Notes: generated from the letters alone by a model not told the origin. A stretch of 64,000 nucleotides of DNA from Macrostomum lignano (GCA_002269645.1 NIVC01000350.1:434001-498000); one strand, 5' to 3'. Positions 1,781 through 36,456 are shown, counted from the first letter of the stretch. A program made the numbers and translations.

Positions 1781-1871
1781 AGCACGCTTCTGACTGAACC
1801 AACCACAGGCTAACTCATGCCAATTAACTTCCGGCCTCAGCCAACCAGTCACTGCTACAGAAGCAACGCAC

Positions 1872-4581: not shown

Positions 4582-6326
4582 CATGTATTTTCTGCACGGA
4601 AGACCGAAATACGCATAATATACTGTACATTCACAGTTCACATTGAAAAAAAATTATACCACAGGCCGTTAAAACGCAGCGATCAATCTCTAATTTAGGA
4701 ATTAAATGCATGCAATTTTGCATTAATTTTCTCTTTTATTCAATTTTAATTACAAATTTCAGAAATCAGAACTTGTATACGTACTTATTTTTTGTTTAAC
4801 ATTCCATTTCATAGAACGCTTATTTACATTGGAAATGCACAAATATGAATATGATCGATTTGTTCAATTGTGCAATAATTTAAAAACAGTACGTAGTAAA
4901 CTTAAAGTCGAAGAAAAGATTGAGCATCGTGGCCTACTTTTTAAGTGTTTTTTCATACGCTTCATAAAATCTAAAAGGGTTATAATATCTGTTTAAAACA
5001 ATTGATACATCACGTTTTAGTTTGACGAAATTACAAGTTATTGAATCATTAAATTATGAATTTAAAATTTATTCATGTGCCTTATGAATATTAGCATTTT
5101 TCTTTACTTCAAAAGTTTGCTGAAACTTAATTTGAAAACTGAAAATATTATAATACTAAGTGCTAATTAAGTGCTAAACCTTTAAAAGCTGCCTGTAGCT
5201 GCAAAACGTATTATAATATTTAATCAAAAAGAGACTTTGCAACACAGGTTTGAATTAGTATGTTCAATTTATTATTAACTCCTTTTAATTTCCCTGGCTA
5301 CTATATATTTACTTAGGAAGGTTGCGTGCAAATCATAATTTCCAATGTGCATTTGCCTAGGCCTACTTTGCCTGGTATATAGTCTAGCATGAAAAAATCT
5401 GTTTGAAAGATCTTTTCAGGGAACTTTTATTTTTACTTTTCAAAAAAGCAGGGGTAGAGCCTCAAACTCAAAGTGCAACTCAGAAGAAAATAAATGAACA
5501 ATATATAAAGCATATTTTATAATATTGCTTATATACTAGGCTAGTAGACATTAAAAGTATCTACCCTATTCTATTCTAAAATATTGTTTCCCATAACTAC
5601 AACCACAGGATGGCGATGCTAGTTGCATTACTTGTAATTGCAATTGTGATTGGAGAGAAATGGCTCACTGGGCCTCGATTAAGGTAGATATTTTTCAATG
5701 TCCACTAGTATAGTTTTTAAAAATAGTTTAATTCTATATTAGGATCATTTTAGAGACATGTATACTAGAAATATTTTATTTGGTTGAATGCTTATAAGTA
5801 GCAGATATAATGTTATCTTGTAATTTAACATATACTTGATTCTTTCTATAGCTCTTTTGTCCTTATTTGTCCTTAGAATTGAGTTACTACCTTGTTGTTT
5901 CTTTGAAATATATTCCCAGAAAAAAAGAAAAAAGGAATTTAGGTTATTTAGCCATTTTTATATTCCAGAAATAATGCAAATTTCATGAAAAACATTTCTA
6001 TGTATATTGCATAAGTATACTCATAGTTTTGTTGAATGAATACAAAATTAATAGGTGTGATTATAATTATAATTTATTGTTATTAATATCTCAAAGTTGT
6101 TTTTAAAATGACTTTTTAAAGTTGATAGTGACACTACAACCATAGGTATATAGGTTAATATAGTTTAAACTTAAACCTGAATCAAAAATTTAAACCTAAA
6201 TCTATACTAAAAACAGTTTTAAATATGCTACTTATCAGTAAAGATAATCCTAGATACTTTATGGAGAGAACGAGCAAGATACCACTTTGACAAAGTACTT
6301 TTATTGGCTCTGCATAAATAATTTTC

Positions 6327-9300
6327 ATGTCAGAAAATTTGTCAGCAGCTCGATCTGCTCTCCACCAACTGCTCAGATGGAGCACTGGCGAACAGGCTGA
6401 TGCTGGAAGCTGCAGCAGTGGCGGAGGCTCCAGTCACTCGCAGCTGGACCTCGCTGTTGCTGCCAAGACTGAAGCATTCCTTGCCGAGGCGTCTGCCAGA
6501 GCCGGCACCATCTCGCCGTCAGCTTGGACGGCCGCCGTGGCTGAGGCCGCCGCTGAGCCGCTGCTCTACTGGCGCTACCTGCGGGCTGTGGCGGCTGGCA
6601 TCGACTGGCTGGCTGAGGCCGCTCAGGAGCCTGGCAACGTCGACAAGGTCTGGCACAAATTGCTTTTGTTGCATAGAGGCCGCCACTAGAGGGGTCAGTT
6701 TTCAAAATTGAAGTGTTGAGGGGCGCCACTTGTAACATAAAGGTGCTACTTTCAATATTGCGGTGCCGTTGTCCAAGTTAAAGTGCCGCTTTGAGTATTG
6801 ATGGGACATTGTCCAAGTTAAAGTGCCGCTTTGAGTATTGATGGGACATTGTCCAAGTTAAAGTGCCGCTTTGAGTATTGATGGGACATTGTCCAAGTTA
6901 AAGTGCCGCTTTGAGTATTGATGGGACATTGTCCAAGTTAAAGTGCCGCTTTGAGTATTGATGGGACATTGTCCAAGTTAAAGTGCCGCTTTGAGTATTG
7001 ATGGGACATTGTCCAAGTTAAAGTGCCGCTTTGAGTATTGATGGGACATTGTCCAAGTTAAAGTGCCGCTTTGAGTATTGATGGGACATTGTCCAAGTTA
7101 AAGTGCCGCTTTGAGTATTGATGGGACATTGTCCAAGTTAAAGTGCCGCTTTGAGTATTGATGGGACATTGTCCAAGTTAAAGTGCCGCTTTGAGTATTG
7201 ATGGGACATTGTCCAAGTTAAAGTGCCGCTTTCAGTATTGATGGGACATTGTCCAAGTTAAAGTGCCGCTTTGAGTATTGATGGGACATTGTCCAAGTTA
7301 AAGTGTCGCTTTGAGTATTGATGGGACATTGTCCAAGTTAAAGTGCTGCTTTGAGTATTGATGGGACATTGTCCAAGTTAAAGTGCCATTTTCAATATTG
7401 AGGGGACATTGTCCAAATTAAAGTGCCGCTTTCAATATTGCAAACGGCATTTGTTTTTCGCTCCAATCCAGGTTGCTATTGGCGACGTGTCCCTGGCCCA
7501 GGCTGGCCTGGAGTTCCTGGCCGGCCTCGGCATTCGGCCCTGTCTGGCGCCGGGCGTCGGTCCGCCTCTCTCCGACCGGTTGGCCAGCGGCCCGGCCGGC
7601 GCCGACCTCCTGCGTGTCCGGCCTCCATCGGACGCGTCCGAACGACGGCGTCGGCTGGCCTGGCTGACCGAAACTCTCGGCCGGTGGACAGAGGGTGACG
7701 GCGCGGTGGCTGTAGCGGCTGGCCGATTCTTGGCGGACAGGCTGGCGGTGCTGCTGCAGCTGTCCTTCGGCCCGGAGGCCGCCGCGCCGGACGGGCTGGC
7801 GGAGCGGACGGCGGCCAGGCGGCGGCTGCACGGCCTGCTGAGCCGCCTGCCCTGCGCGACCGCCATGCGAGAGCTGCTCTGCCTGCACAGGAGGGCCGGG
7901 TGAGGCCAGCGGGTTGGCAGACCGAAATTAACCCGAATTCCATGCCGAAACTGGCCCGAATTCCATCACGAAACTGGCCCGAATTCCATCTTAAAACTGG
8001 CCCGAATTCCACCCCGAAACTGGCCTGAATTCCATCCTTCAACCTGAATTCCATTCCGAAACTGCCCGAATTCCATCCCAAAACTGGCCCGAATTCAATC
8101 GCGAAACTGACTCGAATTCCATCCCGAAACTGGCCCGAATTCCATCCCGAAACTGACTTGAATTTCATGTCGAAACTGATCTGAGTTCTTTCTTGAAATT
8201 AAAGTTTAACCGTTTCCTGGAAACCGAACGAATTCCATAATTTAAGCCACTAAGTCTTGAAGATTACTGCAAGCTCATCTTTCATGCAGTTGTTCCCGAT
8301 GCCAACCCCTCCCTTTAGACTGCCCGACTCTGCAGCCAAGTGGCTGGTCCGAGCTGCCTCCCACCTTCTGTCCGAGCAGCTCCTTCAACGACCTGACGGC
8401 GTTCTCGGCCTACTGGGCGCCGTATTTGACGACGCGGCGGCCGCTGGCGCCGGAGACAGTCGACACTCGGTGTCCGAGAAAGTGACCAGCGTGACCGGCC
8501 TGCTAAGCGCTTGTCCGGCCAAATTTTCGGACAGTCTAGCGAAGCAGCTTTTTCAAGTTTATCGACGCCTCGGCCCTGCGGATAAGCGGTTGCAATCGGC
8601 CTGCTGTCACGTCATCGTCTGCTGGTGCGGCGGCGCCAACAGCCTGGCGGCGGCGACTCTCGACCAGCTGCTTCGCGACTGCGTGCTGGCCGACTTTAGC
8701 TGTCTGGCCGCCAGGCGGCCTGCTACCGCCGCTGCCAACGCCGACGCGTCCAAACTTGCAGTTTCAAACGATGACGTCACCACTTCGTCTAAGCCCGTTG
8801 ATTCAAAAGATGATGTCATCACTTCGTCTAAGCCTGATGATTCAATAGATGGCGTAATCACTTCGTCTAAGTCTGCTGATTCAAAAAATGACGTCACCAC
8901 ATCGTTGAAGTCTGTTGATTCAAAAGATGACGTCATCTCACCCAAAAGACACGCAGCTTCAAATAATGACGTCATCGACTCTGCTGAGCCTATTGATCCA
9001 GAAGATGACGTCATTAGGTCTTCATGCCCTGCTGGATCTGCACCAGAAGACGCTGTGAATCTGGCGGAGCCGCTCAGCCGGTTAAGCATCCTGCTCTCCT
9101 GCGTCAAGCAGACCGACTCAGATTTCTTGCGTCGACTTGCCGGCCTGATTGATCCTTTGTTCTACCTTCTAGTTGCAGCAACTGCGGAACTGCAGCAGCG
9201 GAAACAGCAGCCGCAGAAGCAGCAACAGTGTGATGGCGGTCTTTCTCAACTCTGCGATCGCCTCACAGCCTGTCTGTCTGTATTTCCTGCGGTCTACCCT

Positions 9301-12300
9301 TTTGAGCTGGGGACCGGTCTGCTGCACCGCCTGCTGAGTGAGCCGGTGAACGGCGGTCACCTGCCTAGCGTGGAATTCTCCCTGCCAGGTACATTATTCT
9401 AGCTCTCTGGCATTGCTCAATTTAATATAATCAGATAAGAAACACGGAGATTGAGTCAACAGCGTCGGACTCACGACTTGAAGGTTGGCGGTTCGATTCC
9501 CGATCCCACTCGGAACAATTTGTGTCCTTGAGTAAGACACTTAACTCTGTATTGCTTCAGTTCACCCAGCTGTAAAATTGGTGCCAGCATTAACTGAGTA
9601 ATTGAGGGTGTATGTGGCGACCCCCAGTCCTTGGACTGAATAGCCATACGCAGCCTTCAGATCTATGAAGAAACTGAAGCTATGAAAGTCGAACTAGCCT
9701 ACTTTAGTAAGTAAAAAGTCAAGAAAAAGGTTACTCAAAAATGATTTATGTGAACTACTAATAGTAAAATATAAGTATCTGGGTATTATTTTGTATATAA
9801 AAAAATCTGCACAATTTCAAACGCTGCCTATCTCATTCAGATTCGATCCTAGTTCGTCCGCGCCACGTCCAGCTCCCGGATGTCGGCGATCCGGCGCTGC
9901 GCCTGACCGCTGCGGATGTTGTTTTGGCGCTGCTCGACTCAACCAGTGACAGTTCCGGTCGTCCGGGCCTGTCCGGCAGGTTGTTCGGCCGGCTGCTCAA
10001 AGATCTGTCCGATTCGTTCTCAACCAACGGTGGCTGCATGGGCCTCGGCCAGCTGTCCGCGCTTGTCCGCCTGTGCCAGGAGCCGCGACTGGCCGAGCGA
10101 GTTTTCTCAACCGCCCAGCCGGCCGACTTGGCCAGCCTGTGCCAGTCGCTGCTGCGGCACACCATGCTGCCATCGGCGGCTTCGTCAGCCGAGCTGGATG
10201 AGCAGCGGCGCGAATCGCTCGAGCTCGCCCTGTCGATCGTGTCGGCGGTGACGCTTGGCCTGCACTCGGCCGGCAGCAACGCCGAGGTCGCAGCGCTGAC
10301 ACCGACGCTACTGGAGGCGGCCGGCCGGGCCGACCTTCCGGAGGCAACACGTCAGCTGGCCCGCAGCTTGGCTGTGCGGACGGCCACCCTCGGCCGGGTG
10401 AGCGTCGGCGATGACATCGACGAGGCGTGTCGGACGCGGCCCACGGCAGTGTCGGACCTTCTACTGTCGGGGTCGGCTCTGTTGGATCCCGGCAACGAGG
10501 AGAAGATGGAGAAGGAAGTCGAAGACGAGGAAGGAGAGGTGGGCGCATTTCATGATTGATTATTGCATTTCATGATTGATTATTGCATTTCATGATTGAT
10601 TATTGCATTTCATGATTGATTGATGCATTTCATGATTGATTGATGCATTTCATGATTGATTATTGCATTTCATGATTGATTATTGCATTTCATGATTGAT
10701 TGATGCATTTCATGATTGATTATTGCATTTCATGATTGATTGATGCATTTCATGATTGATTATTGCATTTCATGATTGATGATTGCATTTCATGATTGAT
10801 TGATGCATTTCATGATTGATTGATGCATTTGATGATTGATTGATGCATTTGATGATTGATTGATGCATTTGATGATTGATTGATACATTTGATGATTGAT
10901 TGATGCATTTCATGATTGATTGATGCATTTCATGATTGATTATCGCATTTCATGATTGATTATTGCATTTCATGATTGATTATTGCATTTCATGATTGAT
11001 TGATGCATTTCGTAATTGATTGATGCATTTGATGCTTGATTGATGTATTTCATGATTGATTATTGCATTTCATGATTGACTGATGCATTTCATGATTGAT
11101 TGATGCATTTGATGATTGATTGATGCATTTCATGATTGATTGATGCATTTCATGATTGATTGATGCATCTAATGATTGATTGATGCATTTGATGATTGAT
11201 TGATGCATTTGATGATTGATTGATACATTTGATGATTGATTGATGCATTTCATGATTGATTATTACATTTCATGATTGATTGATGCATTTGATGATTGAT
11301 GCATTTCATGATTGATTGATGCATTTGATGATTGATTGATGGATTTCATGATTGATTAATGCATTTCATGATTGATTATTGAATTTCATGACTGATTGAT
11401 GCATTTCATGATTGATTATTGCATTTCATGATTGATTATTGCATTTCATGATTGATTATTGCATTTCATGATTGATTGATGCATTTCGTGATTGATTGAT
11501 GCATTTGATGATTGATTGATGTATTTCATGATTGATTATTGCATTTCATGATTGATTGATGCATTTGATGATTGATTGATGCATTTGATGATTGATTGAT
11601 GCATCTAATGATTGATTGATGCATTTGATGATTGATTGATGCATTTGATGATTGATTGATACATTTGATGATTGATTGATGCATTTCATGATTGATTAAT
11701 GCATTTCATGATTGATTATTGCATTTCATGATTGATTGATGCATTTGATGATTGATGCATTTCATGATTGATTGATGTATTTGATGATTGATTGATGGGT
11801 TTCATGATTGATTATTGCATTTCATGATTGATTATTGCATTTCATGATTGATTGATGCATTTCATGATTGATTGATGCATTTCATGATTGATTGATGCAT
11901 TTCATGATTGATTGATGCATTTGATGATTGATTGATACATTTGATGATTGATTGATGCATTTCATGATTGATTAATGCATTTCATGATTGATTATTGCAT
12001 TTCATGATTGATTGATGCATTTGATGATTGATGCATTTCATGATTGATTGATGTATTTGATGATTGATTGATGGGTTTCATGATTGATTATTGCATTTCA
12101 TGATTGATTATTGCATTTCATGATTGATTGATGCATTTCATGATTGATTGATGCATTTCATGATTGATTGATGCATTTCATGATTGATTGATGCATTTCA
12201 TGATTGATTGATGCATTTCATGATTGATTATTGCATTTCATGATTGATTATTGCATTTCATGATTGATTGATGCATTTGATGATTGATTGATGCATTTCA

Positions 12301-15300
12301 TGATTGATTGATGCATTTCATGATTGATTGATGCATTTCATGATTGATTATTGAATTTCATGATTGATTGATGCATTTCATGATTGATGCATTTCATGAT
12401 TGATTGATGCATTTGATGATTGATTGATGCATTTCATGATTGATTATTGCATTTCATGATTGATTATTGCATTTCATGATTGATTATTGCATTTCATGAT
12501 TGATTGATGCATTTGATGATTGATTGATGCATTTCATGATTGATTGATGCATTTGATGATTGATTGATGCATTTGATGATTGATTGATACATTTGATGAT
12601 TGATTGATGCATTTCATGATTGATTAATGCATTTCATGATTGATTATTGCATTTCATGATTGATTGATGCATTTGATGATTAATGCATTTCATGATTGAT
12701 TGATGTATTTGATGATTGATTGATGGGTTTCATGATTGATTAATGCATTTCATGATTGATTATTGCATTTCATGATTGATTGATGCATTTCATGATTGAT
12801 TGATGCATTTCATGATTGATTGATGCATTTCATGATTGATTGATGCATTTCATGATTGATTGATGCATTTCATGATTGATTGATGCATTTCATGATTGAT
12901 TGATGCATTTCATGATTGATTGATGCATTTCATGATTGATTGATGCATTTCATGATTGATTGATGCATTTCATGATTGATTGATGCATTTCATGATTGAT
13001 TGATGCATTTCATGATTGATTATTGAATTTCATGATTGATTGATGCATTTCATGATTGATGCATTTCATGATTGATTGATGCATTTGATGATTGATTGAT
13101 GCATTTCATGATTGATTATTGCATTTCATGATTGATTATTGCATTTCATGATTGATTGATGCATTTCATGATTGATTGATGCATTTCATGATTGATTGAT
13201 GCATTTGATGATTGATTGATGCATTTGATGATTGATTGATGCATTTCATGATTGATTGATGCATTTCATGATTGATTGATGCATTTCATGATTGATTATT
13301 GCATTTCATGATTGATTATTGCATTTCATGATTGATTATTGCATTTCATGATTGATTGATGCATTTCGTGATTGATTGATGTATTTCATGATTGATTGAT
13401 GCATTTCATGATTGATTGATGCATTTCATGATTGATTGATGCATTTCATGATTGATTGATGCATTTCATGATTGATTGATGCATTTCATGATTGATTGAT
13501 GCATCTAATGATTGATTGATGCATTTGATGATTGATTGATGCATTTGATGATTGATTGATGCATTTGATGATTGATTGATACATTTGATGATTGATTGAT
13601 GCATTTCATGATTGATTAATGCATTTCATGATTGATTATTGCATTTCATGATTGATTGATGCATTTGATGATTGATTGATGCATTTCATGATTGATTATT
13701 ACAGTTCATGATTGATTGATGCATTTGATGATTGATGCATTTCATGATTGATTGATGCATTTGATGATTGATTGATGGGTTTCATGATTGATTATTGCAT
13801 TTCATGATTGATTATTGCATTTCATGATTGATTGATGCATTTCATGATTGATTGATGCATTTCATGATTGATTGATGCATTTCATGATTGATTATTGCAT
13901 TTCATGATTGATTATTGCATTTCATGATTGATTGATGCATTTGATGATTGATGCATTTGATGATTGATTGATGCATTTCATGATTGATTGATGCATTTCA
14001 TGATTGATTGATGCATTTCATGATTGATTATTGAATTTCATGATTGATTGATGCATTTCATGATTGATTGATGCATTTCATGATTGATTGATGCATTTCA
14101 TGATTGATTGATGCATTTCATGATTGATGCATTTCATGATTGATGCATTTCATGATTGATTGATTGATGCATTTGATGATTGATGCATTTCATGATTGAT
14201 TGATCCCCTTGATGATTTATTGATGCGTTAGATGATTGTTTATCCTTGGTAATTAATAATTGATTTTGATGATTGATTAATGTCTGATAATTGATTGATA
14301 TCTTTGATGATTGATTGGTGACTTTGATAATTGATTGATGCTGCCTTTGATATTAACTTCCTGTAAGTATTTATCGTCTCTCCCTCCCCCCAGACCCTCA
14401 AGTTTCCGTGCTTTGACGCCCTGATTCATAACATTACGGTCATAGAGACTTAGATCCATACTGTTATGGTTTTCATATTCGATAATTGGGTCACTGGATT
14501 GGAACAACTGTCCAGGGATCAATTACGTTCGCGGCCTATAATTAATTTGGGGCTCGTGCACAAATATTTGCCCGGTGCTTGTGTCAACCGCCTGTGTGTT
14601 TACATGCCTGACGATAAGAAATTCAAGGACCGTTGTACACCCTGTGTGAGCGGGTGCGTGTGCCTGCTCAGAGGTCAGAAAAATGGGCATGACGACTGCT
14701 TGCCTTCTGGCTGGCTGCGGGTCGACTGTCGCCTTGATTAACAAATAACTAAGTACATTCTACTCTGTAATTTTGTCCCTCAATTCTATTTTAAATGACC
14801 TCAAACTGTGTCCTGGTTCCTCTTAGGCGCCAGCCGCCTACCGTGCCGTCTTCGCCGACATCCAGTCTGGCGAGCCGCCGCGAATGGGCGCCGGCATTTT
14901 GGCGCTGACGCGACAGCTGCGCGCCGGCGCTCCGCGCGGTCCCCGCCTAGCCGACGCCTGCGCCCGGCTGTTGCAGATGTGCGCCGATCATCCTGACAGC
15001 TATGTGCACCTGCCCGCCGCCGAGGCACTGGCTGTGCTGGCCTGCCAGCTGCCCGACCGCCTGCTGCCACTGCTGGCCGGCCTCTACGGGCCCGGCGACG
15101 GACCAGGCGGCGCCGGAGGGCGACGGCGATCCACAGAGCTGCGGCTACGAATTGGCGAGGTGATTCAGAAAGCTTCATGTCGATCATCTGCTGTCAGGGG
15201 TTTGCTCTCTTCAACTGCATTCCCGCAGTTCCTAAGCTGCATTCCCACAGCCTCAATCTTCACAAGCTGCATTCCCACAGCCTCAATCTTCACAAGCTGC

Positions 15301-16851
15301 ATTCCCACAGTCTCATTCTTCACAAGCTGCATTCCCACAGTCTCAATCTTCACAAGCTGCATTCCCACAGCCTCAATCTTCACAAGCTGCATTCCCACAG
15401 CCTCAATCTTCACAAGCTGCATTCCCACAGCCTCATTCTTCACAAGCTGCATTTCCACAGCCTCAATCTTCACAAGCTGCATTCCCACAGCCTCAATCTT
15501 CACAAGCTGCATTCCCACAGCCTCAATCTTCACAAGCTGCATTCCCACAGCCTCATTCTTCACAAGCTGCATTTCCACAGCCTCAATCTTCACAAGCTGC
15601 ATTCCCATAGCCTCAATCTTCACAAGCTGCATTTCTACAGTCTCAATCTTCACAAGCTGCATTCCCACAGCCTCAATCTTCACAAGTTGCATTTCTACAG
15701 TCTCAATCATCACAAGCTGCATTCCCACAGCCTCAATCTTCACAAGCTGCATTCCCACAGTCTCATTCTTCACAAGCTGCATTGCCACAGCCTCAATCTT
15801 CACAAGCTGCATTTCCACAGCCTCAATCTTCACAAGCTGCATTCCCACAGCCTCAATCTTCACAAGCTGCATTCCCACAGCCTCAATCTTTACAAGCTGC
15901 ATTCCCACAGTCTCAATCTTCACAAGCTGCATTCCCACAGCCTCAATCTTCACAAGCTGCATTTCTACAGTCTCAATCTTCACAAGCTGCATTCCCACAG
16001 CCTCAATCTTCACAAGCTGCATTTCTACAGTCTCAATCTTCACAAGCTGCATTCCCACAGCCTCAATCTTCACAAGCTGCATTTCTACAGTCTCAATCTT
16101 TACAAGCTGCATTCCCACAGCCTCAATCTTTACAAGCTGCATTTCTACAGTCTCATTCTTCACAAGCTGCATTGCCACAGCCTCAATCTTCACAAGCTGC
16201 ATTCTCACAGCCTCAATCTTCACAAGCTGCATTCTCACAGCCTCAATCTTCACAAGCTGCATTCTCACAGCCTCAATCTTCACAAGCTGCATTTCTCATG
16301 CTTGGCTAGTGCAAACGAACCCGCCACCGCCACCGCAGTCAATGGTCCGCTGCAGCCGCTATTTGAACGAGCTGCTTCCCAGCCAGACCAGTCGCATAGT
16401 TGGGCCGCTTCTGCTAGGTGCCCGCGACCCGGAGCCGCAGCTGCGTGCCAGCGCCGTCAGCTGCCTCGCCGAACTGTGCGGCCGTCAGCGCTGGTGGTGC
16501 CTGGACAGGCCGTCAGTCGGGCTGCAGGAGATTCTCGGCTGCGCCTGCTCGCTGCTACGCTCGGATCCGGACCCGCTGCCGAGACGGGCGGCCGCTCACC
16601 TCCTCTGCCAGCTGGTGCGCGCCTGCGACCGCCTCAGCCTGGCCGGTCTGCCGGCCGCCTGTCTGTCCGAGCTGCACCGGGCTCTGCGGCTGGCCGAATC
16701 GGTCGAACGAGACGAGGCCGCATTGGTGCAGGTGCGCCTGGCGCTGGAGGAACTGGACGCCTGCGTGCGGGATGCGCTGTTCCCAGCGCCGTCTGCTGAC
16801 CGGATGCAGAAGAGAATCTGGGTGCTGGACGCGCCTGGCGATAGTCAGTGA
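6327..16851 (+). CDS. TANGO6: TANGO6 (TMCO7 / yeast RTP1-like) ARM/HEAT protein. Exons 6327-6647, 7472-7899, 8319-9388, 9841-10538, 14827-15159, 16339-16851; 3363 nt, 1120 aa
   Basis: All five introns are GT-AG with compatible phases (0,2,1,0,0). Motifs LEFLAGLGIRPCLAPGVGPPL, WLVRAASHLLSEQLLQRPDGV, LRLRIGE|SMVR, GARDPEPQLRASAVSCLAELC and VRLALEELDACVRDALFP...KRIWVL match recalled TANGO6 blocks. Confidence 0.9.
6770..7440. repeat. 40-bp minisatellite in TANGO6 intron 1
   Basis: Unit ttgtccaagttaaagtgccgctttgagtattgatgggaca, near-identical copies with degenerate ends. Confidence 0.97.
7922..8180. repeat. ~23-bp degenerate minisatellite in TANGO6 intron 2
   Basis: Unit gaaactggcccgaattccatccc. 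Confidence 0.92.
8765..9020 (+). repeat. Coding 33-bp (11-aa) degenerate repeat within TANGO6 exon 3 (DDVITSSKPxD)n
   Basis: Repeated gatgacgtcaccacttcgtctaag units in the open TANGO6 frame. Confidence 0.8.
9447..9715 (+). mobile_element. tRNA-derived CORE-SINE copy 1 (TANGO6 intron 3)
   Basis: B-box GGTTCGATTCCC followed by tgtgtccttgagtaagacacttaactctgtattgcttcagttcacccagctgtaaaattgg, which is collinear with the recalled MIR/CORE consensus. Confidence 0.75.
10547..14205. repeat. 3.65-kb 20-bp satellite in TANGO6 intron 4
   Basis: Unit gcatttcatgattgattgat with tatt/ttga variants and occasional 16-bp units. Confidence 0.98.
14545..14735 (+). mobile_element. Second SINE-like family, truncated copy
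   Basis: Shares ggggctcgtgc...catgcctgacgat...tgtacaccctgtgtgagcg with copies at 29365, 30970, 34430 and 40248. Confidence 0.65.
15232..16295. repeat. 30-bp minisatellite in TANGO6 intron 5
   Basis: Unit agctgcattcccacagcctcaatcttcaca, about 35 copies, open in the TANGO6 frame. Confidence 0.97.
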
Positions 16852-17147
16852 ATTGGCTCGTAGAATTGCATTTTCTGACGAAAGTGAAAAAGCGTTAAAC
16901 CGATCGGCAAAGTAGAACATTGCATTTTGTCTTGTTTCTCGAAAAACTGTGCAGTTTTCTTGTCGATTTATTTAAATTTTGATAGACCTAAGGCCAAAAC
17001 AGACAAGCTAGAAACTTCATAATCTGGAAATTTCACATCGTCTAAGAGAGTTTTGCTAATTTCGCTGGCTCGAATCTTCTACTATATATATGTAGTAGGC
17101 ACTTCAGTCCAAGGCATCTAATATTATTCTGTAAATTATGCTTTCAG

Positions 17148-18797
17148 TCACAAGCCAATCTGCCTCTGTCGCTGCTGTTGCTGCTGCCGCTGCTGCTGCC
17201 GCTGGTGGTGGCGGGCGGCGGGCCGCTGCTCAACTGCAGCAACGCAGCCGCAGGATCGCCAGCTCCGAGGTCGATCCGGCCCGGCGAGTCGCTGCAGCTG
17301 CGGTTGAGCATCGGCGGCGCAGGCGGCAGCCGCTCCTGCCACTCGCTGCTTGTCGGCAGCGCCACCGGAGCCAGCAGGTGGCATTTCTATGTCAGACTGA
17401 TCGGCCAGCTTCGCCATCAGTCCTCAGTGCTGATTCTGCGCACTCGCCAGCTCGGCGGCTCGCAGGTCGCCATGGTGACGCACAAAAACCAGGGCTTGTA
17501 CCGAGCATTCGCAGTGCAGTATTGGAGCATCTATGCCAGCCTGAGCAGCCCATCTCTGGCGGGCTCATCAGATGAGGTGCTGCTGGACATCGAGCTGGTG
17601 ACGAAGTGTCCCAGGAACTGGTTCTACAGCAACGGCAGCTGCTACGGTGCGGCGTCTGTAGAGAACTCGTTTGCGTCGTTCGACGAGGCGGTGACTGGGT
17701 GCCGTCACGTGGGAGCCAACCTGGCGATGGACTTCGGGTCCGTCAGTGAGTTGAGGAGCGGCCTGTCCGCCTCAGGCTGGCCACCCGATCAGCCGGTGTG
17801 GATCGGGGCGGCAGCCAGCAAGTACTCGGTGTACTTTCTCAGTGCCAAGGAGCTCGGGCTGCCTCTTGTGTGAGTCTTCTACTAGTTAATGAGCATTTTT
17901 TCGATCTTTTTTAAATCGATTGAATCGAAACTTTTTCTCTGCAGGGTGGAAGAGTCTCGGGACTTCAGCCACGGCATCTCGATGAACTGTTCGCGCTGGT
18001 CTTGCCGCTGCGTGTTTGTTGCTAAGGGCGAATACTTCTTGGCTGACTGCGACAAGAAGCTGCCCTACCTGTGCAGCGGCTGCGCTGACTGTTTAGTCCG
18101 ACCGGTTTACGACTTGGACGGCCTCGATGACTTGTTGGACGGATCTCTTGTCTCTGATGACGAAAAAGTTTGCTCCGGCTTCAGCTGCGGGCTGTTAATC
18201 TTTGGCTGTCTTTTTGGCGCTGTCCTGTTTGGGCTGTTTTTCGCGCGAGACAATGACTGCCCCACCAGCAGGCCGGCCTCGCGACTGCGCACCTGCCTGA
18301 GCCGGCTTCGGTCCCGGCTGCGCAGGTGTCTGCGATTCACGCGTTCTCGAGCTGCCAGCGGTGTGCGCGATGGCGGCACGCCCGATCTGGAAGATGTGGC
18401 AAACTCTCAGACTGAGTCAGTTGCTACGGCAACCGTTGCTACGGATCCTGGAAACATTGACGTCGCAGTGGACGATTCGGCCGACGGCGGCCCGCCGAGC
18501 TACGATGTGGCGGCTGCGGTGTCGGAGATTTTGAACTCAATAGACTCGGACTCGGTTGTCATGGAAACCAATGCAGCAGAGTCCGGCACCGGTGCTGAAT
18601 TGTATGCTCCGCCAGATGATGACGAAGGACCTCCGAGCTACGCTGAAGCGGCAGCCGCAGCCACGCCGAGTCCGTCCGCGCTGACCGCCGCATCAGCCGA
18701 CTCGGTCGAGGACTCGCCGAACCAGCCGGAGCCTCCGCCGTCCTACGCTGCCGCTCTGGCCGCCTTTGGCGACGACGGTGGCGCCAGCGAAGCCTGA
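17148..18797 (+). CDS. CUB-like + C-type lectin type I membrane protein, member A. Exons 17148-17869 and 17945-18797; the start codon must be supplied by splicing
   Basis: Hydrophobic leader LPLSLLLLLPLLLPLVVAG, then CPRNW..SNGSCY...FDEAVTGCRHVGANLA...WIG. Phase-2 75-nt intron GT|GTGAGT...GCAG|G. C.CV...YFLADCDKKLPYLC, TM GLLIFGCLFGAVLFGLFF, three PPSY motifs. Confidence 0.85.
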
Positions 18798-20638: not shown

Positions 20639-20708
20639 CCTAGGTTTATGAGCAATCAATTGTAATAAATGCAACAATCTTCTTTTGCCACTTCAGCCTC
20701 AATCGGCA

Positions 20709-22511
20709 ATGTGTCGCCTCGAGCATCCAGTGTTCCTGCTGCAGCTGCTTCTGCTGCCGCTGATTCTGTTGCCAGGCGTTTCTAGCCAAAGCGCCTCGTT
20801 TCCCGTGTACAGCTGCAGTGATGGGTCCAGCCCTGCCTACTTCACTCCAACGGAAACCCAGTTTGGCCTTCGACTAGAAATCAGCGAAGCTGTACCAACA
20901 TGCCACGTGCTTATCCGCAACAACCTGCTAACATCCGCCTATTATTACATCCGGGTCAACGGCAGCCTGAAGTCAACGTATACGCGGCTCAGCCTGAGCA
21001 CCAACCATGGCTCTGGAGGCGAGTTCGTTGCTTCCCTGACTTCCTCCAATGATACCGTGTACCGGGCATTCGCCACGCCTGGAAACAGCCTGTACGCCAT
21101 CTTGTCCAGCAGCCTGCCGTCTCCATTCTACAACGAGCTGATCATGCTAGACATTGAGGCCGTTCACGGCTGTCCATCCTGGTGGGTCTCCTACGGCAAA
21201 GAGTGCTTCGGCTCTGCGCGTCCCGACGCATCAGGGACCACTTTTAATACCGCCCTCGGCGCGTGCCGCCAGGTGCGAGCTAATTTAGCCTTGAGCTTTG
21301 ACTCCAGCAGCGCGCTTAAATCGGCAATTTCGAGTTCAGGCTGGTCTAGCTTGACAAAGGTGTGGCTTGGGGCCGCCGACTCTTCGTCTGGAGTGTACTT
21401 TTTGGACGCCAATAAGTTTCTCGTGAGGTAAGCAGAGCACAACAGCTTCCTGTCTTACGTTCTTATCGGGTGAACTAATTAGCATCAATTATCTCTACAG
21501 TGTCTTACTCTCTTATCAGGTGAACTAATTAACATCAATTATCTTCTCAGTGTCTTACGTTCTTATCAGGTGAACTAATTAACATCAATTATCTCTACAG
21601 TGTCTTACTCTCTTATCAGGTGAACTAATTAACATCAATTATCTTCTCAGTGTCTTACGTTCTTATCAGGTGAACTAATTAACATCAATTATCTCTACAG
21701 TGTCTTACTCTCTTATCAGGTGAACTAATTAACATCAAGCTACTTGTCTCAATTTGTTACCAATTGACTCTATTGCTAGTTGCATCGTAGTTAATGCCTA
21801 AGCTCCTATACTGAACATTTATTACTCACTCCCTCCCTCTGCTCCCGATTTTTCAGCTCTAGCGGTAGTCTCAAGTTCTACAGCTCAAGCTCCAGTAGCT
21901 CCGGCTGTTCAACTGGCAGCTGCCGCTGCGTGATCTACAGATTCAACTCGTACTACCGCGAGAACTGCTGGAAGTATCTTCGCTACTTGTGCAGCAGCAG
22001 CATCGGCGGAGAGAGCGAATTCCACAACCTCACTACGCTTGACCGGACTCTGAGTAGCAAAAAGTCTTCGAGCAGTTTTTTCTCGTTTCCCTACTGGTCC
22101 ATCAGCCTGATCATCGGCGGCCTCACCGTGCTCGCCGTGTTCGGCACCCGGATGGCGTTCTACCATCGGGCTGTGGCAGCTCAGCGACGGCGCGAAACGG
22201 CCGGAACTGGCGCTGGAACTCGTAGCGACCTGCCGCCGGCACCGCCCGGCAGCTACCCGGTGCAGCAGCAGCACCCGCCGCCACCGCCGCTGCAGCAGCC
22301 GGCCGCCTACGACAATTCGTCTTTTAACTATCCGAATCCCGCCGCCGCGGGAGCGCCGATGCCGCCGGCCTACAATGCCTGGTACATGCCGCCGCCCGGC
22401 ACTGCCGCCAGCGCTCCAACCGATGCCGACGTCGGCGACAAGCCGCCGCCGTATGAAGCTGCCGCTGGGATGCCAAATCAGCCGATGCCGCCGCCCGAAG
22501 GCAACAACTAG
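20709..22511 (+). CDS. CUB-like + CTLD receptor, member B. Exons 20709-21427 and 21857-22511 (457 aa)
   Basis: Signal peptide MCRLEHPVFLLQLLLLPLILLPGVSS; CPSWW..YGKECF; WLG; phase-2 intron AG|GTAAGC...TTTCAG|C; CRCVIY..NSYYRENCWKYLRYLC; TM; PPAY and PPPY. Confidence 0.9.
21450..21738. repeat. Alternating 50/51-bp repeat in member B intron
   Basis: gtgtcttac(g/t)..cttatcaggtgaactaattaacatcaattatc(tctaca/ttctca). Confidence 0.93.
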
Positions 22512-22659
22512 GCGGCACTTTTGAAGTATGAACCCGTTTAACTGAATGAGTGTAAAAATTCACAACAATCATTGACATGACTCACAATTCATATTTGTCT
22601 AATTCTCTGATGCAAACTAATAAGCGATGAAGCTTGATCTCCATGAGGAGGACACGGGA

Positions 22660-25000: not shown

Positions 25001-25121
25001 GTGGCAGTCAACCTGTAATCCAGCTAGAGTTTTCGGTCAGAAGCTGTCGATACTGCCTAATTTCAGTAATTACTGAATCTACCTGCAACCGGTTTCTCAA
25101 TTTCAGCCTGACTAATGCGCA

Positions 25122-27338
25122 ATGTCGCCGAACTCCGCCATCAAAGCTGTACCTGCACTTTTAGCAGCGGCTTCAATTCTGGCCGCCGTCGCGTCGGGCC
25201 AGACATTTAACTGCACGACCAACTCCACACCGACTGTTGTGGCAGTGAACTCTTCGCGGTTTAGCGTCAGACTTAGTATAGACAGCACGGACAGTCTGTG
25301 CCACATTCTGCTTGTGAGCTCCGCCAGTTCTAGCGGCTATTTCTACGTTAGCCTAGCCAGCACCATGGAGTCTCGCTACTCTCGACTAAGGATCCAATCC
25401 GACTATCCGGGATCCAGGGTCGCCACGATTTCCTCCAGCAGTCAGTCTCGTTACCAATCGTTCGCAACAAAGTCCAACCGGCTGTACGCCTCGCTGAGCA
25501 GACTGTTCTCCAGCCGGTCCACCGTTGACAGCGTCCTGCTGAATGTGCACCTGGTCACCGCGTGCCCGGACGGATGGGTTCTCCACTCGGGCAGGTGCTA
25601 CGGCCCCGCGTCATTGAACAGCACAGTTGCTAGCTTTTCCACCGCCATTATCGCGTGTCGTTACGTGCAAGCCAATCTGGCTATGGGATTCGCTGACGTC
25701 ACCAGGACTCTGGGCGCTGCTCTGCAACTCGCCGGCTGGACTGACGGCCGGCCTGTCTGGGTTGGCGCCGCCTGGAAGAGCAAACCCGAGGCTGTGTACT
25801 TCTTGAACAATACCATATTTATCAGGTAAGCTGGTGGCTTCACTGCCATGCTGAGGTACACTAGTGTGACATGCTGATGTACACATGGCACTAGTATGCC
25901 ATGCTGATGTACACTAGTATGCCATGCTGATGTACGCTAGTGTGCCATGCTGATGTACGCTAGTATGCCATGCTGATGTACACTAGTATGCCATGCTGAT
26001 GTACGCTAGTATGCCATGCTGATGTACACTAGTATGCCATGCTGATGTACGCTAGTATGCCATGCTGATGTACACTAGTATGCCATGCTGATGTACGCTA
26101 GTATGCCATGCTGATGTACACTAGTATGCCATGCTGATGTACACTAGTATGCCATGCTGATGTACGCTAGTATGCCATGCTGATGTACGCTAGTATGCCA
26201 TGCTGATGTACACTAGTGTGCCATGCTGATGTACGCTAGTATGCCATGCTGATGTACACTTGTGTGCCATGCTGATGTACACTTGTGTGCCATGCTGATG
26301 TACACTTGTGTGCCATGCTGATGTACACTAGTGTGTCATGCTGATGTACACTTGTGTGTCATGCTGATGTACACTTGTGTGCCATGCTGATGTACACTTG
26401 TGTGTCATGCTGATGTACACTTGTGTGTCATGCTGATGTACACTTGTGTGCCATGCTGATGTACACTTGTGTGTCATGCTGATGTACACTTGTGTGCCAT
26501 GCTGATGTACACTTGTGTGCCATGCTGATGTACACTTGTGTGTCATGCTGATGTACAATTGTGTGCCATGCTGATGTACACTTGTGTGCCATGCTGATGT
26601 ACACTTGTGTGTCATGCTGATGTACACTTGTGTGCCATGCTGATGTACACTAGTGTGCCATGCTGATATCCAACCGGTGTGAAATGCTGATATCCAACCG
26701 GTGTGACATGCTGATATCCAACCGGTGTGACATGCTGATATCCACCGTAAACCTCTGATAGCCACCTGGAGCCCTATTCTAACAAAATCCGTTCTAACCT
26801 TTGCAGTTCCAGCGTTAAGAAGTCCTGCACCAGTGACTCGTCCAAGTGTCGTTGCGTGCACTACACAGAGCTGAGCACTGCTTTCTTCCACCGGCAGAGC
26901 TGCTCAACTAAGCAAAGCTACCTATGCAGCTGCGCCGTTGGCGGAGATTCCAAATTCTATTCGCTGTTCTCTGAGGATGAGGACAAGACCAGTCGGGCCT
27001 GGATTGTCGGTGTCGTGTTTGCAGTCATTTTTGTTTTCGTTATGTCGGTGGCTGTCGGCACGAAGATCAAGCAGAAACTGACCATCCGGCGGTCCATTTC
27101 CGCCGCCAATGGCCCACGCTTCTCGACAACGGATGTCATTTCCAACAACTTGTACCCGGAGCCGCTGGCGCCGCCGTCATACAATTACGGTGGCAACTGC
27201 GACGAGCAACCGCCGAGCTACAACGAAGCTGTGTCCACCGGGGCTGCCGTTCCTTCGGCTCCAACCCCTGAGGAGATTTACGGCGCTGGGCACTTCCAGC
27301 AGGCAGCTAATTGGAAAGGAGTGCAGAAATTCGACTGA
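25122..27338 (+). CDS. CUB-like + CTLD receptor, member C. Exons 25122-25825 and 26807-27338 (411 aa)
   Basis: Signal peptide; CPDGW..HSGRCY...FSTAIIACRYVQANLA...WVG; phase-2 intron AG|GTAAGC...TTGCAG|T; CRCVHY...RQSCSTKQSYLC; TM WIVGVVFAVIFVFVMSVAVG; two PPSY motifs. Confidence 0.9.
25850..26745. repeat. 23-bp minisatellite in member C intron
   Basis: Unit gccatgctgatgtacactagtat, drifting to cacttgtgt along the array. Confidence 0.96.
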
Positions 27339-27399
27339 CTTGGCTGGCCTGAATGCACTGCCTCTGCCTATGATAGCCAGTTGGGCAGGTAGGAAGTTG

Positions 27400-29480: not shown

Positions 29481-29533
29481 ATTTCTGAAACCCCAAGCCA
29501 ACCAACTCATTCGATTCCAGCCTGAACAGCGCG

Positions 29534-31854: not shown

Positions 31855-31989
31855 AATTTGGTCGGTTGTTGAGTGCTCATCGATTTTGGGATGGCCTTCT
31901 GCGGTTTAGATGTGATTGACTGTGTTCTTAAAATTATTGTTATTCTGAATGCCTGAAAAGGTCAGTGTCGGGTGTCCGAAGAGGTCAGT

Positions 31990-36400: not shown

Positions 36401-36456
36401 ACCAGCCTGACTCGGCGGCTGCTGGTGACGCTGAACCGAGCGACAACAAGAAGTGA
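33441..36456 (+). CDS. CUB-like + CTLD receptor, member E. Exons 33441-34144 and 35847-36456 (437 aa)
   Basis: Signal peptide; CPYGW..SGSVCY...FDQAFELCRMLQANLA...WVG; phase-2 intron CC|GTAGGT...CACAG|G. Exon 2 frame, translated by hand: CECVFYRSGSFYRASCDSRFAQLC...FWPAFFVFGLVVAGSAIGF; PPPY. Confidence 0.88.
34430..34680 (-). mobile_element. Second SINE-like family copy in member E intron
   Basis: Reverse complement contains gtgcgattcacagccatgagag...catgcctgacgat...tgtacaccctgtgtgagcg. Confidence 0.7.
34890..35600. repeat. 52-bp minisatellite in member E intron (unrelated to the member D repeat)
   Basis: atagaaagcgtccctcagacagcaagcatccctggatagaaagaatccataa. Confidence 0.96.

What the first reader, a model, noticed from the sequence alone, without database searches (positions are those of the whole stretch)
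16851..17200. Member A has no start codon; an in-frame acceptor suggests initiation from a trans-spliced leader AUG and an operon with TANGO6
Seen: in the member A frame there is no ATG between an upstream TAA (17043-45) and the end of the signal peptide; the first in-frame ATG is in the middle of the CUB-like domain. A polypyrimidine acceptor ctttcag ends at 17147, and the next base begins TCA CAA GCC AAT CTG CCT CTG TCG CTG CTG TTG, exactly in frame with the signal peptide. TANGO6 stops only about 296 nt upstream on the same strand. Established knowledge: flatworm spliced-leader RNAs end in a conserved AUG that can act as the initiator Met, and SL trans-splicing resolves operons. Inference: the SL-AUG gives MSQANLPLSLLLLLPLLLPLVVAG, a complete signal peptide, and member A is a downstream cistron of a housekeeping gene.
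Basis: partly seen in the sequence, partly recalled or inferred. Interest (0 to 1): 0.82.

Follow-up and report, generated by a model that had tools for sequence, protein, structure and literature searches.

The report
Flatworm gene started by spliced-leader AUG
A lectin-like membrane-protein gene of the flatworm Macrostomum lignano has no start codon of its own and most likely takes it from the AUG at the end of the trans-spliced leader, a mechanism already known in flatworms, so this is a tidy example and not a new kind of thing.

Summary
The window is Macrostomum lignano (GCA_002269645.1, NIVC01000350.1). Member A's frame has a TAA at 17043-45 and no ATG until 17472. CTTTCAG ends at 17147, in frame with a signal peptide, and TANGO6 stops 296 nt upstream.

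- The published M. lignano spliced leader ends in ATG, and its trans-acceptor motif [T/C]TNCAG fits the site.
- GenBank names TANGO6 Mlig017692g1 and member A Mlig017692g2. These are two genes cut from one transcriptional unit, and A is called "partial", starting 15 nt after the acceptor.
- All three genomic copies keep the same ATG-less arrangement and an intact 524-codon ORF.

The assembly was polished with RNA-seq. At the 5' acceptors of TANGO6 and paralogs B-F, some copies have CAG overwritten by suffixes of the leader (CTG, ATG, CATG, TGCATG). I read these as footprints of leader-bearing reads. They also suggest that TANGO6's ATG in this window is an artefact, and that TANGO6, E and F depend on the leader AUG too. 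Member A shows no footprint, so no read-level evidence was seen for it.

The mechanism has been known since Cheng et al. 2006. Novelty: new member of a known kind. Interest 0.3.

The parts
6330..16851 (+). TANGO6 (BOX15_Mlig017692g1, PAA85056.1), first gene of the transcriptional unit. The annotated 5'-partial CDS starts at 6330.
   Evidence: Pfam TANGO6_N, RTP1_C1, HEAT. No called gene in the 10 kb upstream.
6326..6329 (+). CATG where the homeologous copy L003 has the acceptor TCAG. Probably a polishing footprint of the leader tail, so the ATG at 6327-6329 is probably not genomic.
   Evidence: Pilon polishing with RNA-seq is stated in PMC5730564. The ML2-based model P0005 starts IFQSENL, that is TTT CAG TCA.
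16849..16851 (+). TANGO6 stop codon TGA
16852..17147 (+). 296-nt AT-rich spacer (GC 0.35): TANGO6 3' UTR plus the intercistronic/outron sequence of member A. It has no AATAAA or ATTAAA and no GTRAG donor consensus.
   Evidence: donor check by direct reading of the sequence
17102..17107 (+). Second YTNCAG match (CTTCAG). If used, the leader AUG would open a 9-codon ORF ending at 17132-34 and leave the out-of-frame ATG at 17138 in the mRNA, which would be non-productive.
17138..17140 (+). Out-of-frame ATG inside the acceptor tract (145-codon ORF). Trans-splicing at 17147 removes it.
17141..17147 (+). Proposed trans-splice acceptor CTTTCAG of member A, identical in all three genomic copies
   Evidence: motif [T/C]TNCAG from PMC8629364
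17148..17216 (+). Signal-peptide coding part (SQANLPLSLLLLLPLLLPLVVAG). With the leader Met it reads MSQANLPL...
   Evidence: hydrophobic core, Kyte-Doolittle up to 2.9
17148..17869 (+). Member A exon 1 (BOX15_Mlig017692g2, PAA85057.1). The annotated CDS starts at 17163.
17870..17944 (+). Member A intron (GTGAGT...TGCAG)
17945..18797 (+). Member A exon 2: end of the C-type-lectin-like domain, TM helix, cytoplasmic tail with PPSY motifs, stop at 18795-97
20691..22511 (+). Member B (Mlig017692g3). Acceptor CTTCAG ends at 20696 and the annotated CDS starts at 20697. The leader AUG is in frame, and B's own ATG is at 20709.
25101..27338 (+). Member C (Mlig004342g1 here, Mlig019469g4 on the second copy). 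Acceptor TTTCAG ends at 25106. The leader AUG gives the 3-codon uORF MPD*. C's own ATG is at 25122.
29515..31854 (+). Member D (Mlig004342g2). Acceptor TTCCAG ends at 29520 and reads TGCATG in the two other copies. D's own ATG is at 29534, out of frame with the leader AUG.
33449..36456 (+). Member E (Mlig031472g1). Its acceptor reads TTTCATG here and TTTTCTG in the other two copies, so TTTTCAG is inferred. The exon starts at 33456 with the leader AUG in frame, and there is no own ATG downstream before the signal peptide.
39405..41507 (+). Member F. Its acceptor reads TTTCTG here and TTTCAG in the homeolog L009. The annotated CDS starts at 39411, and the leader AUG is in frame.

Best explanation
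Member A is a functional, trans-spliced gene of Macrostomum lignano. It encodes a type I membrane protein with a signal peptide, an N-terminal beta-rich domain, a C-type-lectin-like domain, a TM helix and a PPxY tail. It is transcribed together with the upstream TANGO6 gene, and probably with paralogs B, C and D, as one polycistronic precursor. The 35-nt spliced leader (...TTATTGCATG) is joined to the acceptor CTTTCAG at 17147. This removes the spacer and its out-of-frame ATG at 17138, and places the leader's terminal AUG directly in frame with TCA CAA GCC..., so translation starts MSQANLPLSLLLLLPLLLPLVVAG. Shown: the sequence anatomy, the identity of the organism and of its leader, the co-annotation of the two genes in one transcriptional unit, and conservation of the arrangement in three genomic copies. 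Inferred: that the leader is actually joined at 17147, that its AUG is the initiator, and that the precursor is truly polycistronic.
For: (1) Anatomy.
(2) The organism is M. lignano and the gene is PAA85057.1, annotated 'partial'. All five database models of this gene lack a start codon.
(3) The leader ends in ATG, and [T/C]TNCAG is the top motif at M. lignano trans-acceptors. Operon spacing peaks near 100 bp, with a 1-kb threshold (PMC8629364).
(4) TANGO6 is Mlig017692g1, A is g2 and B is g3. On the second copy TANGO6, A, B and C are Mlig019469g1-g4. gN denotes genes cut out of one RNA-seq transcriptional unit using leader and poly(A) signals (PMC5730564).
(5) The annotated 5'-partial CDS of A begins 15, 18 and 15 nt after the acceptor in the three copies. 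It is never upstream of it, so the transcript excludes 17108-17147 and therefore excludes the other candidate acceptor. All seven genes show the same 0-25 nt offset, including first genes of units, so the offset is not set by an upstream poly(A) site.
(6) The neighbours are demonstrably leader-spliced at the homologous position. In 10 of 17 copies of the TANGO6 and B-F acceptors, the bases at -2 to -5 are replaced by nested suffixes of the leader (CTG, ATG, CATG, TGCATG), while another copy keeps CAG. This is expected because the assembly was Pilon-polished with RNA-seq. I predicted the F case from the window alone and then confirmed it in L009.
(7) TANGO6 (intact copy tttttCAG|TCA GAA), E and F also have no ATG of their own after the acceptor, with the leader AUG in frame. 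Leader-AUG initiation is therefore common at this locus.
(8) The ORF of A is intact in all three copies, with 4 synonymous and 3 non-synonymous differences. The CTLD profile match (E = 7e-6 to mannose receptor) means the protein needs its signal peptide.
(9) Leader-AUG initiation has been demonstrated in Schistosoma and noted for Macrostomum.
Against: I saw no read carrying the leader joined at 17148, because RNA-seq could not be queried here. Member A is the only one of the seven genes with no leader-tail footprint in any of its three copies. At the rate seen in the others (10/17), 0 of 3 has a probability of about 0.07. This may mean low expression or no trans-splicing. The annotated transcript starts at about 17161-17163, not at 17148, and I cannot explain this offset mechanistically. 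The acceptor motif occurs at chance frequency. The three copies are about 99% identical, so their agreement says little about selection. No orthologs outside M. lignano were found. Transcriptional units built from RNA-seq can merge adjacent genes without a true polycistronic precursor.
Confidence: 0.75

Rival explanations
1. Member A is leader-spliced and uses the leader AUG, but it is not a downstream cistron. It has its own promoter in or near the 296-nt spacer, and the spacer is simply its outron. The shared transcriptional unit would then be an artefact of RNA-seq assembly across a short gap.
For: Most trans-spliced genes in flatworms and in M. lignano are not in operons: about 40% of trans-spliced genes are in operons. 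RNA-seq units can merge neighbours. Unit boundaries differ between copies: C is g4 of the TANGO6 unit on one contig and g1 of its own unit on another.
Against: The TANGO6-A linkage is annotated on all three copies (Mlig017692, Mlig019469, Mlig002897). The 296-nt spacing is well inside the published operon range. A housekeeping gene and a lectin-like gene sharing a unit is typical of operons.
Confidence: 0.2
2. Translation of member A starts at a non-AUG codon, for example CUG at 17160 or 17166. This would happen on an mRNA whose 5' end lies near 17161 as annotated, or after leaky scanning past the leader AUG.
For: The annotated transcripts begin at about 17161-17166. Several in-frame CTG codons follow. 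The leader AUG has a weak context, with U at -3 (my reading of the leader sequence). Near-cognate initiation on leader-spliced mRNAs is reported in other taxa (PMC9851317).
Against: There is no AG at 17161-17163, so that 5' end cannot be a splice product. The same 15-18 nt offset is seen at genes whose acceptors carry leader footprints, which marks it as an annotation offset. An mRNA starting at 17161 would have essentially no 5' UTR.
Confidence: 0.07
3. Member A is a start-codon-loss pseudogene or untranslated paralog. It lost the ATG that B, C and D carry 12-15 nt after their acceptors and is merely transcribed as part of the unit.
For: A is the only one of the B/C/D-like paralogs without its own ATG. 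It has ATC, out of frame, where B has ATG (direct reading). A is the only gene without a leader footprint, which fits low mature-mRNA abundance. No Pfam hit reaches threshold.
Against: All three copies keep a 524-codon ORF across a correctly spliced intron, with no frameshift or stop, and 4 synonymous against 3 non-synonymous differences. The conserved cysteines and CTLD core align with the paralogs. The leader AUG is exactly in frame with an uninterrupted signal peptide. TANGO6, E and F show the same ATG-less design, and TANGO6 is unlikely to be a pseudogene.
Confidence: 0.06
4. The acceptor at 17147 is used in cis. An upstream exon supplies the ATG, for example TANGO6 exon 5, whose donor after 15159 is phase 0 and would splice in frame. 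This would give a fusion or alternative first exon.
For: Flatworm acceptors are often shared between cis- and trans-splicing (PMC12582326). The phases happen to match (direct reading). Ab initio models fuse TANGO6 and A.
Against: The three fused models use three different non-consensus junctions and skip the signal peptide, which is typical of predictor artefacts. The transcript-based annotation separates g1 and g2. A HEAT-repeat cytosolic protein fused ahead of a signal peptide makes no biological sense. No ATG-plus-donor exon is possible within the spacer.
Confidence: 0.03

Closest known systems
Leader-AUG-initiated mRNAs of Schistosoma mansoni (Cheng, Cohen, Ndegwa & Davis 2006, J Biol Chem 281:733; 'slORFs' in PMC9851317)
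   Same: The flatworm leader ends in AUG. The recipient exon has no start codon of its own. The acceptor is placed so that the leader AUG is in frame and supplies the initiator Met.
   Different: The species and leader sequence differ (M. lignano, a free-living macrostomorph). Here the case is inferred from genome and annotation, not shown on cDNA or by translation assays.
M. lignano transcriptional units and operons (Wudarski et al. 2017, PMC5730564; Ustyantsev & Berezikov 2021, PMC8629364)
   Same: Same-strand neighbours are annotated as g1, g2, g3 of one RNA-seq unit. The spacing is under 1 kb after subtracting repeats. There is a single leader and a YTNCAG acceptor.
   Different: Those papers do not discuss the leader AUG as initiator, nor this locus. 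Here the first gene of the unit also appears to be trans-spliced, and the unit mixes a housekeeping gene with a tandem array of lectin-like paralogs.
Caenorhabditis elegans operons (SL2 trans-splicing of downstream cistrons)
   Same: A polycistronic precursor is resolved by 3' end formation of the upstream gene and trans-splicing of the downstream gene a short distance away.
   Different: Nematode leaders do not end in AUG and do not supply the start codon. Nematodes use a specialised SL2 for downstream genes, whereas M. lignano has one leader.
C-type lectin-like domain receptors (mannose receptor CTLDs, DC-SIGN)
   Same: The family profile of A-E matches CTLDs (best E = 7e-6). The cysteines and the WIGL-like core are conserved. 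The layout is type I membrane.
   Different: Very divergent. Pfam Lectin_C is below threshold for B and absent for A. There is an extra N-terminal domain of unverified fold. No relatives were found outside M. lignano.

Membership tests
Leader-AUG-initiated trans-spliced mRNA (flatworm type) | The organism has a spliced leader whose last three bases are AUG | tested here: met
   Organism identified as M. lignano. Leader CGGTCTCTTACTGCGAAGACTCAATTTATTGCATG (PMC8629364).
Leader-AUG-initiated trans-spliced mRNA (flatworm type) | [quoted passage not shown] | tested here: met
   CTTTCAG at 17141-47 fits [T/C]TNCAG. No GTRAG in the 296-nt spacer. The motif alone is at chance frequency.
Leader-AUG-initiated trans-spliced mRNA (flatworm type) | The leader AUG is in frame with the ORF and no other usable AUG lies upstream of the essential N-terminus | tested here: met
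   in frame; the next in-frame ATG is codon 109; the only nearby ATG (17138) lies in the outron and is out of frame.
Leader-AUG-initiated trans-spliced mRNA (flatworm type) | mRNA molecules carrying the leader joined at that acceptor | not testable with these tools
   No RNA-seq access. Indirect only: the annotated 5' end lies 15-18 nt downstream of the acceptor. Leader-tail footprints occur at the acceptors of the six neighbouring genes but not at A.
Leader-AUG-initiated trans-spliced mRNA (flatworm type) | Translation actually initiates at the leader AUG | not testable with these tools
   Needs initiation-site ribosome profiling or reporter mutagenesis.
SL-resolved operon (polycistronic transcriptional unit) | Same-strand adjacent genes with short intergenic distance | tested here: met
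   296 nt from the TANGO6 stop to the A acceptor. The published threshold is 1 kb with a mode near 100 bp.
SL-resolved operon (polycistronic transcriptional unit) | A single precursor transcript covering both genes | tested here: inconclusive
   The published annotation puts both genes in one RNA-seq transcriptional unit on all three copies (convention). I could not inspect the reads, and assembly can merge neighbours.
SL-resolved operon (polycistronic transcriptional unit) | The downstream gene is trans-spliced and has no promoter of its own | not testable with these tools
   Needs SL-read mapping, CAGE/RAMPAGE, or promoter deletion.
C-type lectin-like domain protein | Significant match to the CTLD profile with the conserved cysteine framework | tested here: inconclusive
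   The family profile hits mannose-receptor and DC-SIGN CTLDs (E = 7e-6 to 0.03). Cysteines are invariant in A-E. Pfam Lectin_C scores 20.6 bits against a 22.6 cut-off for B and gives nothing for A.

The most novel reading that the evidence does not exclude
Start-codon-less genes are the norm at this locus, not a curiosity. Four of seven consecutive same-strand genes (TANGO6, A, E, F) have no AUG of their own after the trans-splice acceptor, and in a fifth (B) the leader AUG is in frame. Leader addition would then be an obligatory licence for translation, and paralogs would toggle between their own ATG and the leader ATG. Linked to this, the Mlig_3_7 reference carries systematic false bases at trans-splice acceptors: leader-tail imprints from RNA-seq polishing. 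These create spurious genomic ATGs, such as the TANGO6 'start codon' at 6327-29, and destroy real acceptors.
Probability: 0.55. Interest if true: 0.45.

Novelty: new member of a known kind. Interest (0 to 1): 0.3.

Why it matters
For this gene, the finding turns a "partial" GenBank model into a complete protein (MSQANL...). It also explains why three generations of gene models either truncated it or fused it to TANGO6.

More generally, it shows that in M. lignano, a transgenic model flatworm, many "5'-partial" models may be complete once the leader AUG is added. It also shows that promoter and start-codon choices for transgenes need the trans-splice site.

The side finding matters to anyone using the Mlig_3_7 reference. 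RNA-seq polishing appears to have written the leader's last 1-5 bases over real acceptors. This creates false ATGs and masks splice sites.

None of this changes what is known about the mechanism.

Tried and rejected
- **SL RNA gene in the window:** none found with up to 3 mismatches.
- **Homologs of member A outside M. lignano:** two database searches returned only the gene's own cluster, so no cross-species test of the ATG-less design was possible. The TANGO6 search also returned only M. lignano entries.
- **Literature and supplement searches for the gene identifiers:** nothing found.
- **Short leaders of B, C and D as relics of a retro-copied spliced leader:** I tested whether the sequence between acceptor and own ATG resembles the leader. 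Local alignment against the leader is not better than shuffles, with 335 to 3741 of 5000 shuffles scoring as well. Rejected.
- **Greedy reconstruction of the TANGO6 exon chain:** it gave 1021 aa instead of the annotated 1119, so I used a database search instead.
- **Genome-wide scan for adjacent-mismatch clusters between copies:** swamped by tandem-repeat misalignment. It showed only that doublet substitutions also occur elsewhere at low frequency.
- **Look-up of the spliced E protein given as letters:** Solved through cluster ids instead.
- **Poly(A) signal of TANGO6:** no AATAAA or ATTAAA in the spacer. The 3' end could not be placed.
- **Cheng et al. 2006:** not held in the library. It is cited through papers that summarise it.
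Full report
**1. The observation**

- In the frame of 17148 the nearest upstream stop is TAA at 17043-45.
- There is no in-frame ATG until 17472 (codon 109), then 17727.
- CTTTCAG occupies 17141-47.
- The next base opens TCA CAA GCC AAT CTG CCT CTG TCG CTG CTG TTG, which encodes a hydrophobic signal-peptide core (Kyte-Doolittle up to 2.9).
- TANGO6 ends with TGA at 16849-51, 296 nt before the end of the acceptor.
- The spacer contains only two ATGs: 17090 (followed at once by TAG) and 17138 (out of frame, 145 codons, inside the acceptor tract).
- GC content jumps from 0.35 to 0.68 across 17147/17148, as it does at the first exons of the neighbouring genes.
- Of the eight AGs between 17046 and 17200, only 17147 both fits the acceptor motif and gives a long ORF with a leader AUG. 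A second motif match, CTTCAG at 17102-07, would give a 9-codon dead end.
- The motif itself is not informative: YTNCAG occurs 321 times in the window against 320 expected.

**2. What and where this is**

A protein search identifies member A as PAA85057.1, "hypothetical protein BOX15_Mlig017692g2, partial", of Macrostomum lignano (100% identity). The window corresponds to NIVC01000350.1:434001-498000 of GCA_002269645.1.

Spliced over one 75-nt intron (17870-17944), the ORF is 524 codons. A family profile of five paralogs hits C-type lectin domains: macrophage mannose receptor at E = 7e-6, and DC-SIGN. Pfam Lectin_C is just below threshold for B and absent for A. With the TM helix and the PPSY-rich tail, this is a type I membrane protein that needs its signal peptide. 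Initiation at the internal ATG is therefore not a sensible reading. I did not verify the "CUB-like" label for the N-terminal domain.

**3. The published background**

- M. lignano has one 35-nt spliced leader, CGGTCTCTTACTGCGAAGACTCAATTTATTGCATG.
- About 30% of its genes are trans-spliced and about 15% lie in operons.
- The top motif at trans-acceptors is [T/C]TNCAG.
- Repeat-adjusted distances within operons peak near 100 bp, with a 1-kb threshold (PMC8629364).
- The genome annotation was built by assembling RNA-seq into "transcriptional units". A pipeline (TBONE) then cut these into genes named MligNNNNNN.gK at experimentally mapped leader and poly(A) sites (PMC5730564).
- The flatworm leader AUG can act as initiator. 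It is in frame in 28% of trans-spliced S. mansoni transcripts and is required by more than 40 cDNAs (Cheng et al. 2006, as summarised in PMC9851317).
- Wiberg et al. [quoted passage not shown]

The question is only whether it applies here.

**4. Evidence that it applies to member A**

(a) TANGO6 in this window is BOX15_Mlig017692g1, A is g2 and B is g3. On a second genomic copy TANGO6, A, B and C are Mlig019469g1-g4, and a third copy has Mlig002897g1-g3. The published RNA-seq annotation thus already treats TANGO6 and A as two genes cut from one transcript, on all three copies. No gene is called within 10 kb upstream of TANGO6.

(b) All database models of A lack a start codon. Three GenBank models begin PLSLL or LSLL. 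One UniRef model begins LPLVV. Three WormBase-derived UniRef models fuse TANGO6 to A through three different implausible junctions that skip the signal peptide.

(c) The 5'-partial CDS of A starts 15, 18 and 15 nt after the acceptor in the three copies. A 5'-partial call requires the ORF to be open to the transcript end. The annotated transcript therefore begins after 17147 and does not include 17108-17147. This argues for 17147 and against the alternative acceptor at 17107. It also argues against a cut at a distant poly(A) site.

(d) The three copies are 99% identical across the spacer and share the acceptor and the lack of ATG. The CDS differs at seven sites (4 synonymous, 3 non-synonymous) with no frame disruption. 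These numbers are too small to prove selection.

**5. The neighbours and an unexpected source of evidence**

The window holds six tandem paralogs, A to F, all on the + strand. I compared the 5' ends of TANGO6 and A-F among the homeologous contigs. The last bases before the first exon differ between copies in one specific way:

| Gene | This window | Other copies |
|---|---|---|
| TANGO6 | ttttCATG | tttttATG; tttttCAG |
| B | cttCAG | cttCTG (one copy); cttCAG (one copy) |
| C | tttCAG | tttATG (one copy); tttCAG (one copy) |
| D | ttCCAG | tGCATG (two copies) |
| E | tttCATG | ttttCTG (two copies) |
| F | tttCTG | tttCAG |

Every change converts the base to the corresponding base of the leader tail ...TTGCATG. 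The changes always form a contiguous suffix reaching the splice site: -2 only, -2 and -3, -2 to -4, or -2 to -5.

[quoted passage not shown] Reads that begin a few bases inside the leader and are aligned end-to-end would vote for exactly these bases, most strongly nearest the junction. I therefore read these differences as imprints of leader-bearing RNA-seq reads, not as mutations.

Three points support this reading:
- The nested-suffix pattern holds across six genes.
- I predicted the F case from the window sequence alone (TTTCTG|AAT), and then found TTTCAG in the homeolog, with an annotated CDS start exactly at the predicted base.
- The independent ML2-based model P0005 begins IFQSENL, that is TTT CAG TCA.

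Doublet substitutions do occur elsewhere between copies. They are not targeted to acceptors, nor directed towards the leader sequence.

**6. Consequences of the footprints**

The footprints are positive evidence that TANGO6 and B-F are leader-spliced at these acceptors.

They also imply that the ATG at 6327-29 in this window, which looks like TANGO6's start codon, is probably not in the genome. The intact copy reads TAA ATA ATT TTT CAG|TCA GAA AAT, with no ATG, and the next in-frame Met lies about 243 codons downstream. GenBank starts the CDS at 6330 and calls it partial.

TANGO6 would then depend on the leader AUG (M-SENLSAARS...), as would E (M-SPSLLGPVALPLLL...) and F (M-NPRFSPVAFPLLL...). 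In E and F a genomic in-frame ATG lies 15 nt upstream, in the outron.

- In B the leader AUG is in frame, four codons ahead of B's own ATG.
- In C it opens the 3-codon uORF MPD*.
- In D it is out of frame.

The leader AUG is thus in frame with an open ORF in five of seven genes (expected one third; binomial p about 0.045, but E and F are not independent).

**7. What weakens the case for A**

A is the only gene with an intact CAG in all three copies. The others show footprints in 10 of 17 copies, so 0 of 3 has a probability of about 0.07. The simplest reading is lower mRNA abundance. It could also mean that A is not trans-spliced.

The 0-25 nt offset between acceptors and annotated 5' ends is systematic but unexplained. 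It also occurs at first genes of units (TANGO6 on the second copy, C on the third, E). An upstream poly(A) site therefore does not cause it, and I treat it as a property of the annotation pipeline.

I saw no read, cDNA or peptide for A.

**8. Origin of the arrangement (inference)**

B, C and D carry their own ATG 12-15 nt after the acceptor: cag|CCTCAATCGGCAATG, cag|CCTGACTAATGCGCAATG and cag|CCTGAACAGCGCGATG. At the corresponding place A has cag|TCACAAGCCAATCTG, with ATC out of frame. A most likely lost its own ATG, and its 5' end was remodelled so that the leader AUG reads straight into the signal peptide.

I tested whether these short leaders are relics of a retro-copied spliced leader. They are not better than chance.

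**9. Operon**

By the published criteria the whole array qualifies or nearly qualifies. I measured distances from each CDS end to the next acceptor and subtracted the tandem arrays:

| Gap | Repeat-adjusted distance (nt) |
|---|---|
| TANGO6-A | 296 |
| A-B | 720 |
| B-C | 734 |
| C-D | 1031 |
| D-E | 753 |
| E-F | 1129 |

Each spacer holds a different satellite. This matches the remark of Ustyantsev & Berezikov that repeats inflate operon spacers. The annotated units overlap between copies (g1-g3 plus g1-g2 here; g1-g4 on the second contig). They therefore chain TANGO6 through D.

Whether A is truly a downstream cistron, or instead has a promoter in the spacer, cannot be decided here. I give the operon reading about 0.7 and the leader-AUG reading about 0.75-0.8.

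**10. Verdict**

This is a new example of a mechanism known since 2006, and of an operon type already catalogued genome-wide in this species. Interest is modest (0.3).

The more useful by-products are three:
- "Partial" models at this locus are complete once the leader Met is added.
- A conserved housekeeping gene appears to share the dependence on the leader AUG.
- The reference assembly seems to carry leader-tail imprints at trans-splice acceptors.

Noticed in passing
window 6326-6329, 33452-33455, 39409; L002 2864-2866 and 13153; L003 21402-21403; L006 and L007 D acceptor (TGCATG); L006 and L007 E acceptor (CTG): At trans-splice acceptors of TANGO6 and paralogs B-F, near-identical genomic copies differ only by replacement of the last 1-5 outron bases with the matching suffix of the spliced leader (CTG, ATG, CATG, TGCATG). 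The assembly was Pilon-polished with RNA-seq, so these look like polishing imprints of leader-bearing reads: false ATGs and destroyed acceptors in the reference.
   Followed up: yes
window 6327-6329 (TANGO6): The apparent TANGO6 start codon is probably such an imprint. The third copy has tttttCAG|TCAGAAAAT with TAA four codons upstream and no ATG. TANGO6 itself would then need the leader AUG, with the next Met about 243 codons in.
   Followed up: partly
window 33441-33456 (E) and 39396-39411 (F): E and F have an in-frame genomic ATG exactly 15 nt upstream of the trans-splice site, and the leader AUG is in frame at the site. Unspliced and trans-spliced RNAs would give N-termini differing by five residues (MLHF./MAAFL versus M).
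   Followed up: partly
window 20697-20711, 25107-25124, 29521-29536: The leader AUG has a different consequence in each paralog. In B it adds MPQSA in frame before B's own ATG. In C it opens a 3-codon uORF (MPD*) ending 6 nt before C's own ATG. In D it opens an out-of-frame ORF overlapping D's own ATG.
   Followed up: partly
annotated CDS starts: window 6330, 17163, 20697, 25122, 29537, 33474, 39411 and their homeologs: GenBank 5'-partial CDS starts lie 0, 3, 9, 15, 16, 18 or 25 nt downstream of the acceptors, with a cluster at 15-18 nt, and sometimes cut off a gene's own ATG (C and D). The cause in the annotation pipeline is unexplained.
   Followed up: partly
window 10545-14341, 15234-16293, 19461-20639, 22659-24157, 24646-25007, 25844-26739, 27397-27924, 28480-29102, 30231-30909, 31972-32819, 34889-35600, 36677-38501: Almost every intron and intergenic spacer of this gene array holds its own unrelated tandem-repeat array (periods 12-52 bp). 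One is a 3.8-kb 20-bp satellite inside a TANGO6 intron. Another is a 30-bp array that stays open in three frames and mimics a coding ORF (14884-16851).
   Followed up: no
UniRef A0A1I8I1L8, A0A1I8J3H7, A0A1I8GPA1 (P0005, P0008, P0009): Three older gene models fuse TANGO6 to member A through three different junctions that skip the signal peptide. These look like prediction artefacts caused by the short spacer and the missing ATG.
   Followed up: yes
window 18440-18790 (A tail) and the tails of B-F: The cytoplasmic tails of all paralogs are proline-rich with repeated PPSY/PPPY/PPAY motifs (three PPSY in A). These resemble WW-domain (Nedd4-type) binding sites.
   Followed up: no
window 52507-53767: A 1.2-kb degenerate TC-rich low-complexity tract with strong strand asymmetry (GC skew -0.66).
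   Followed up: no
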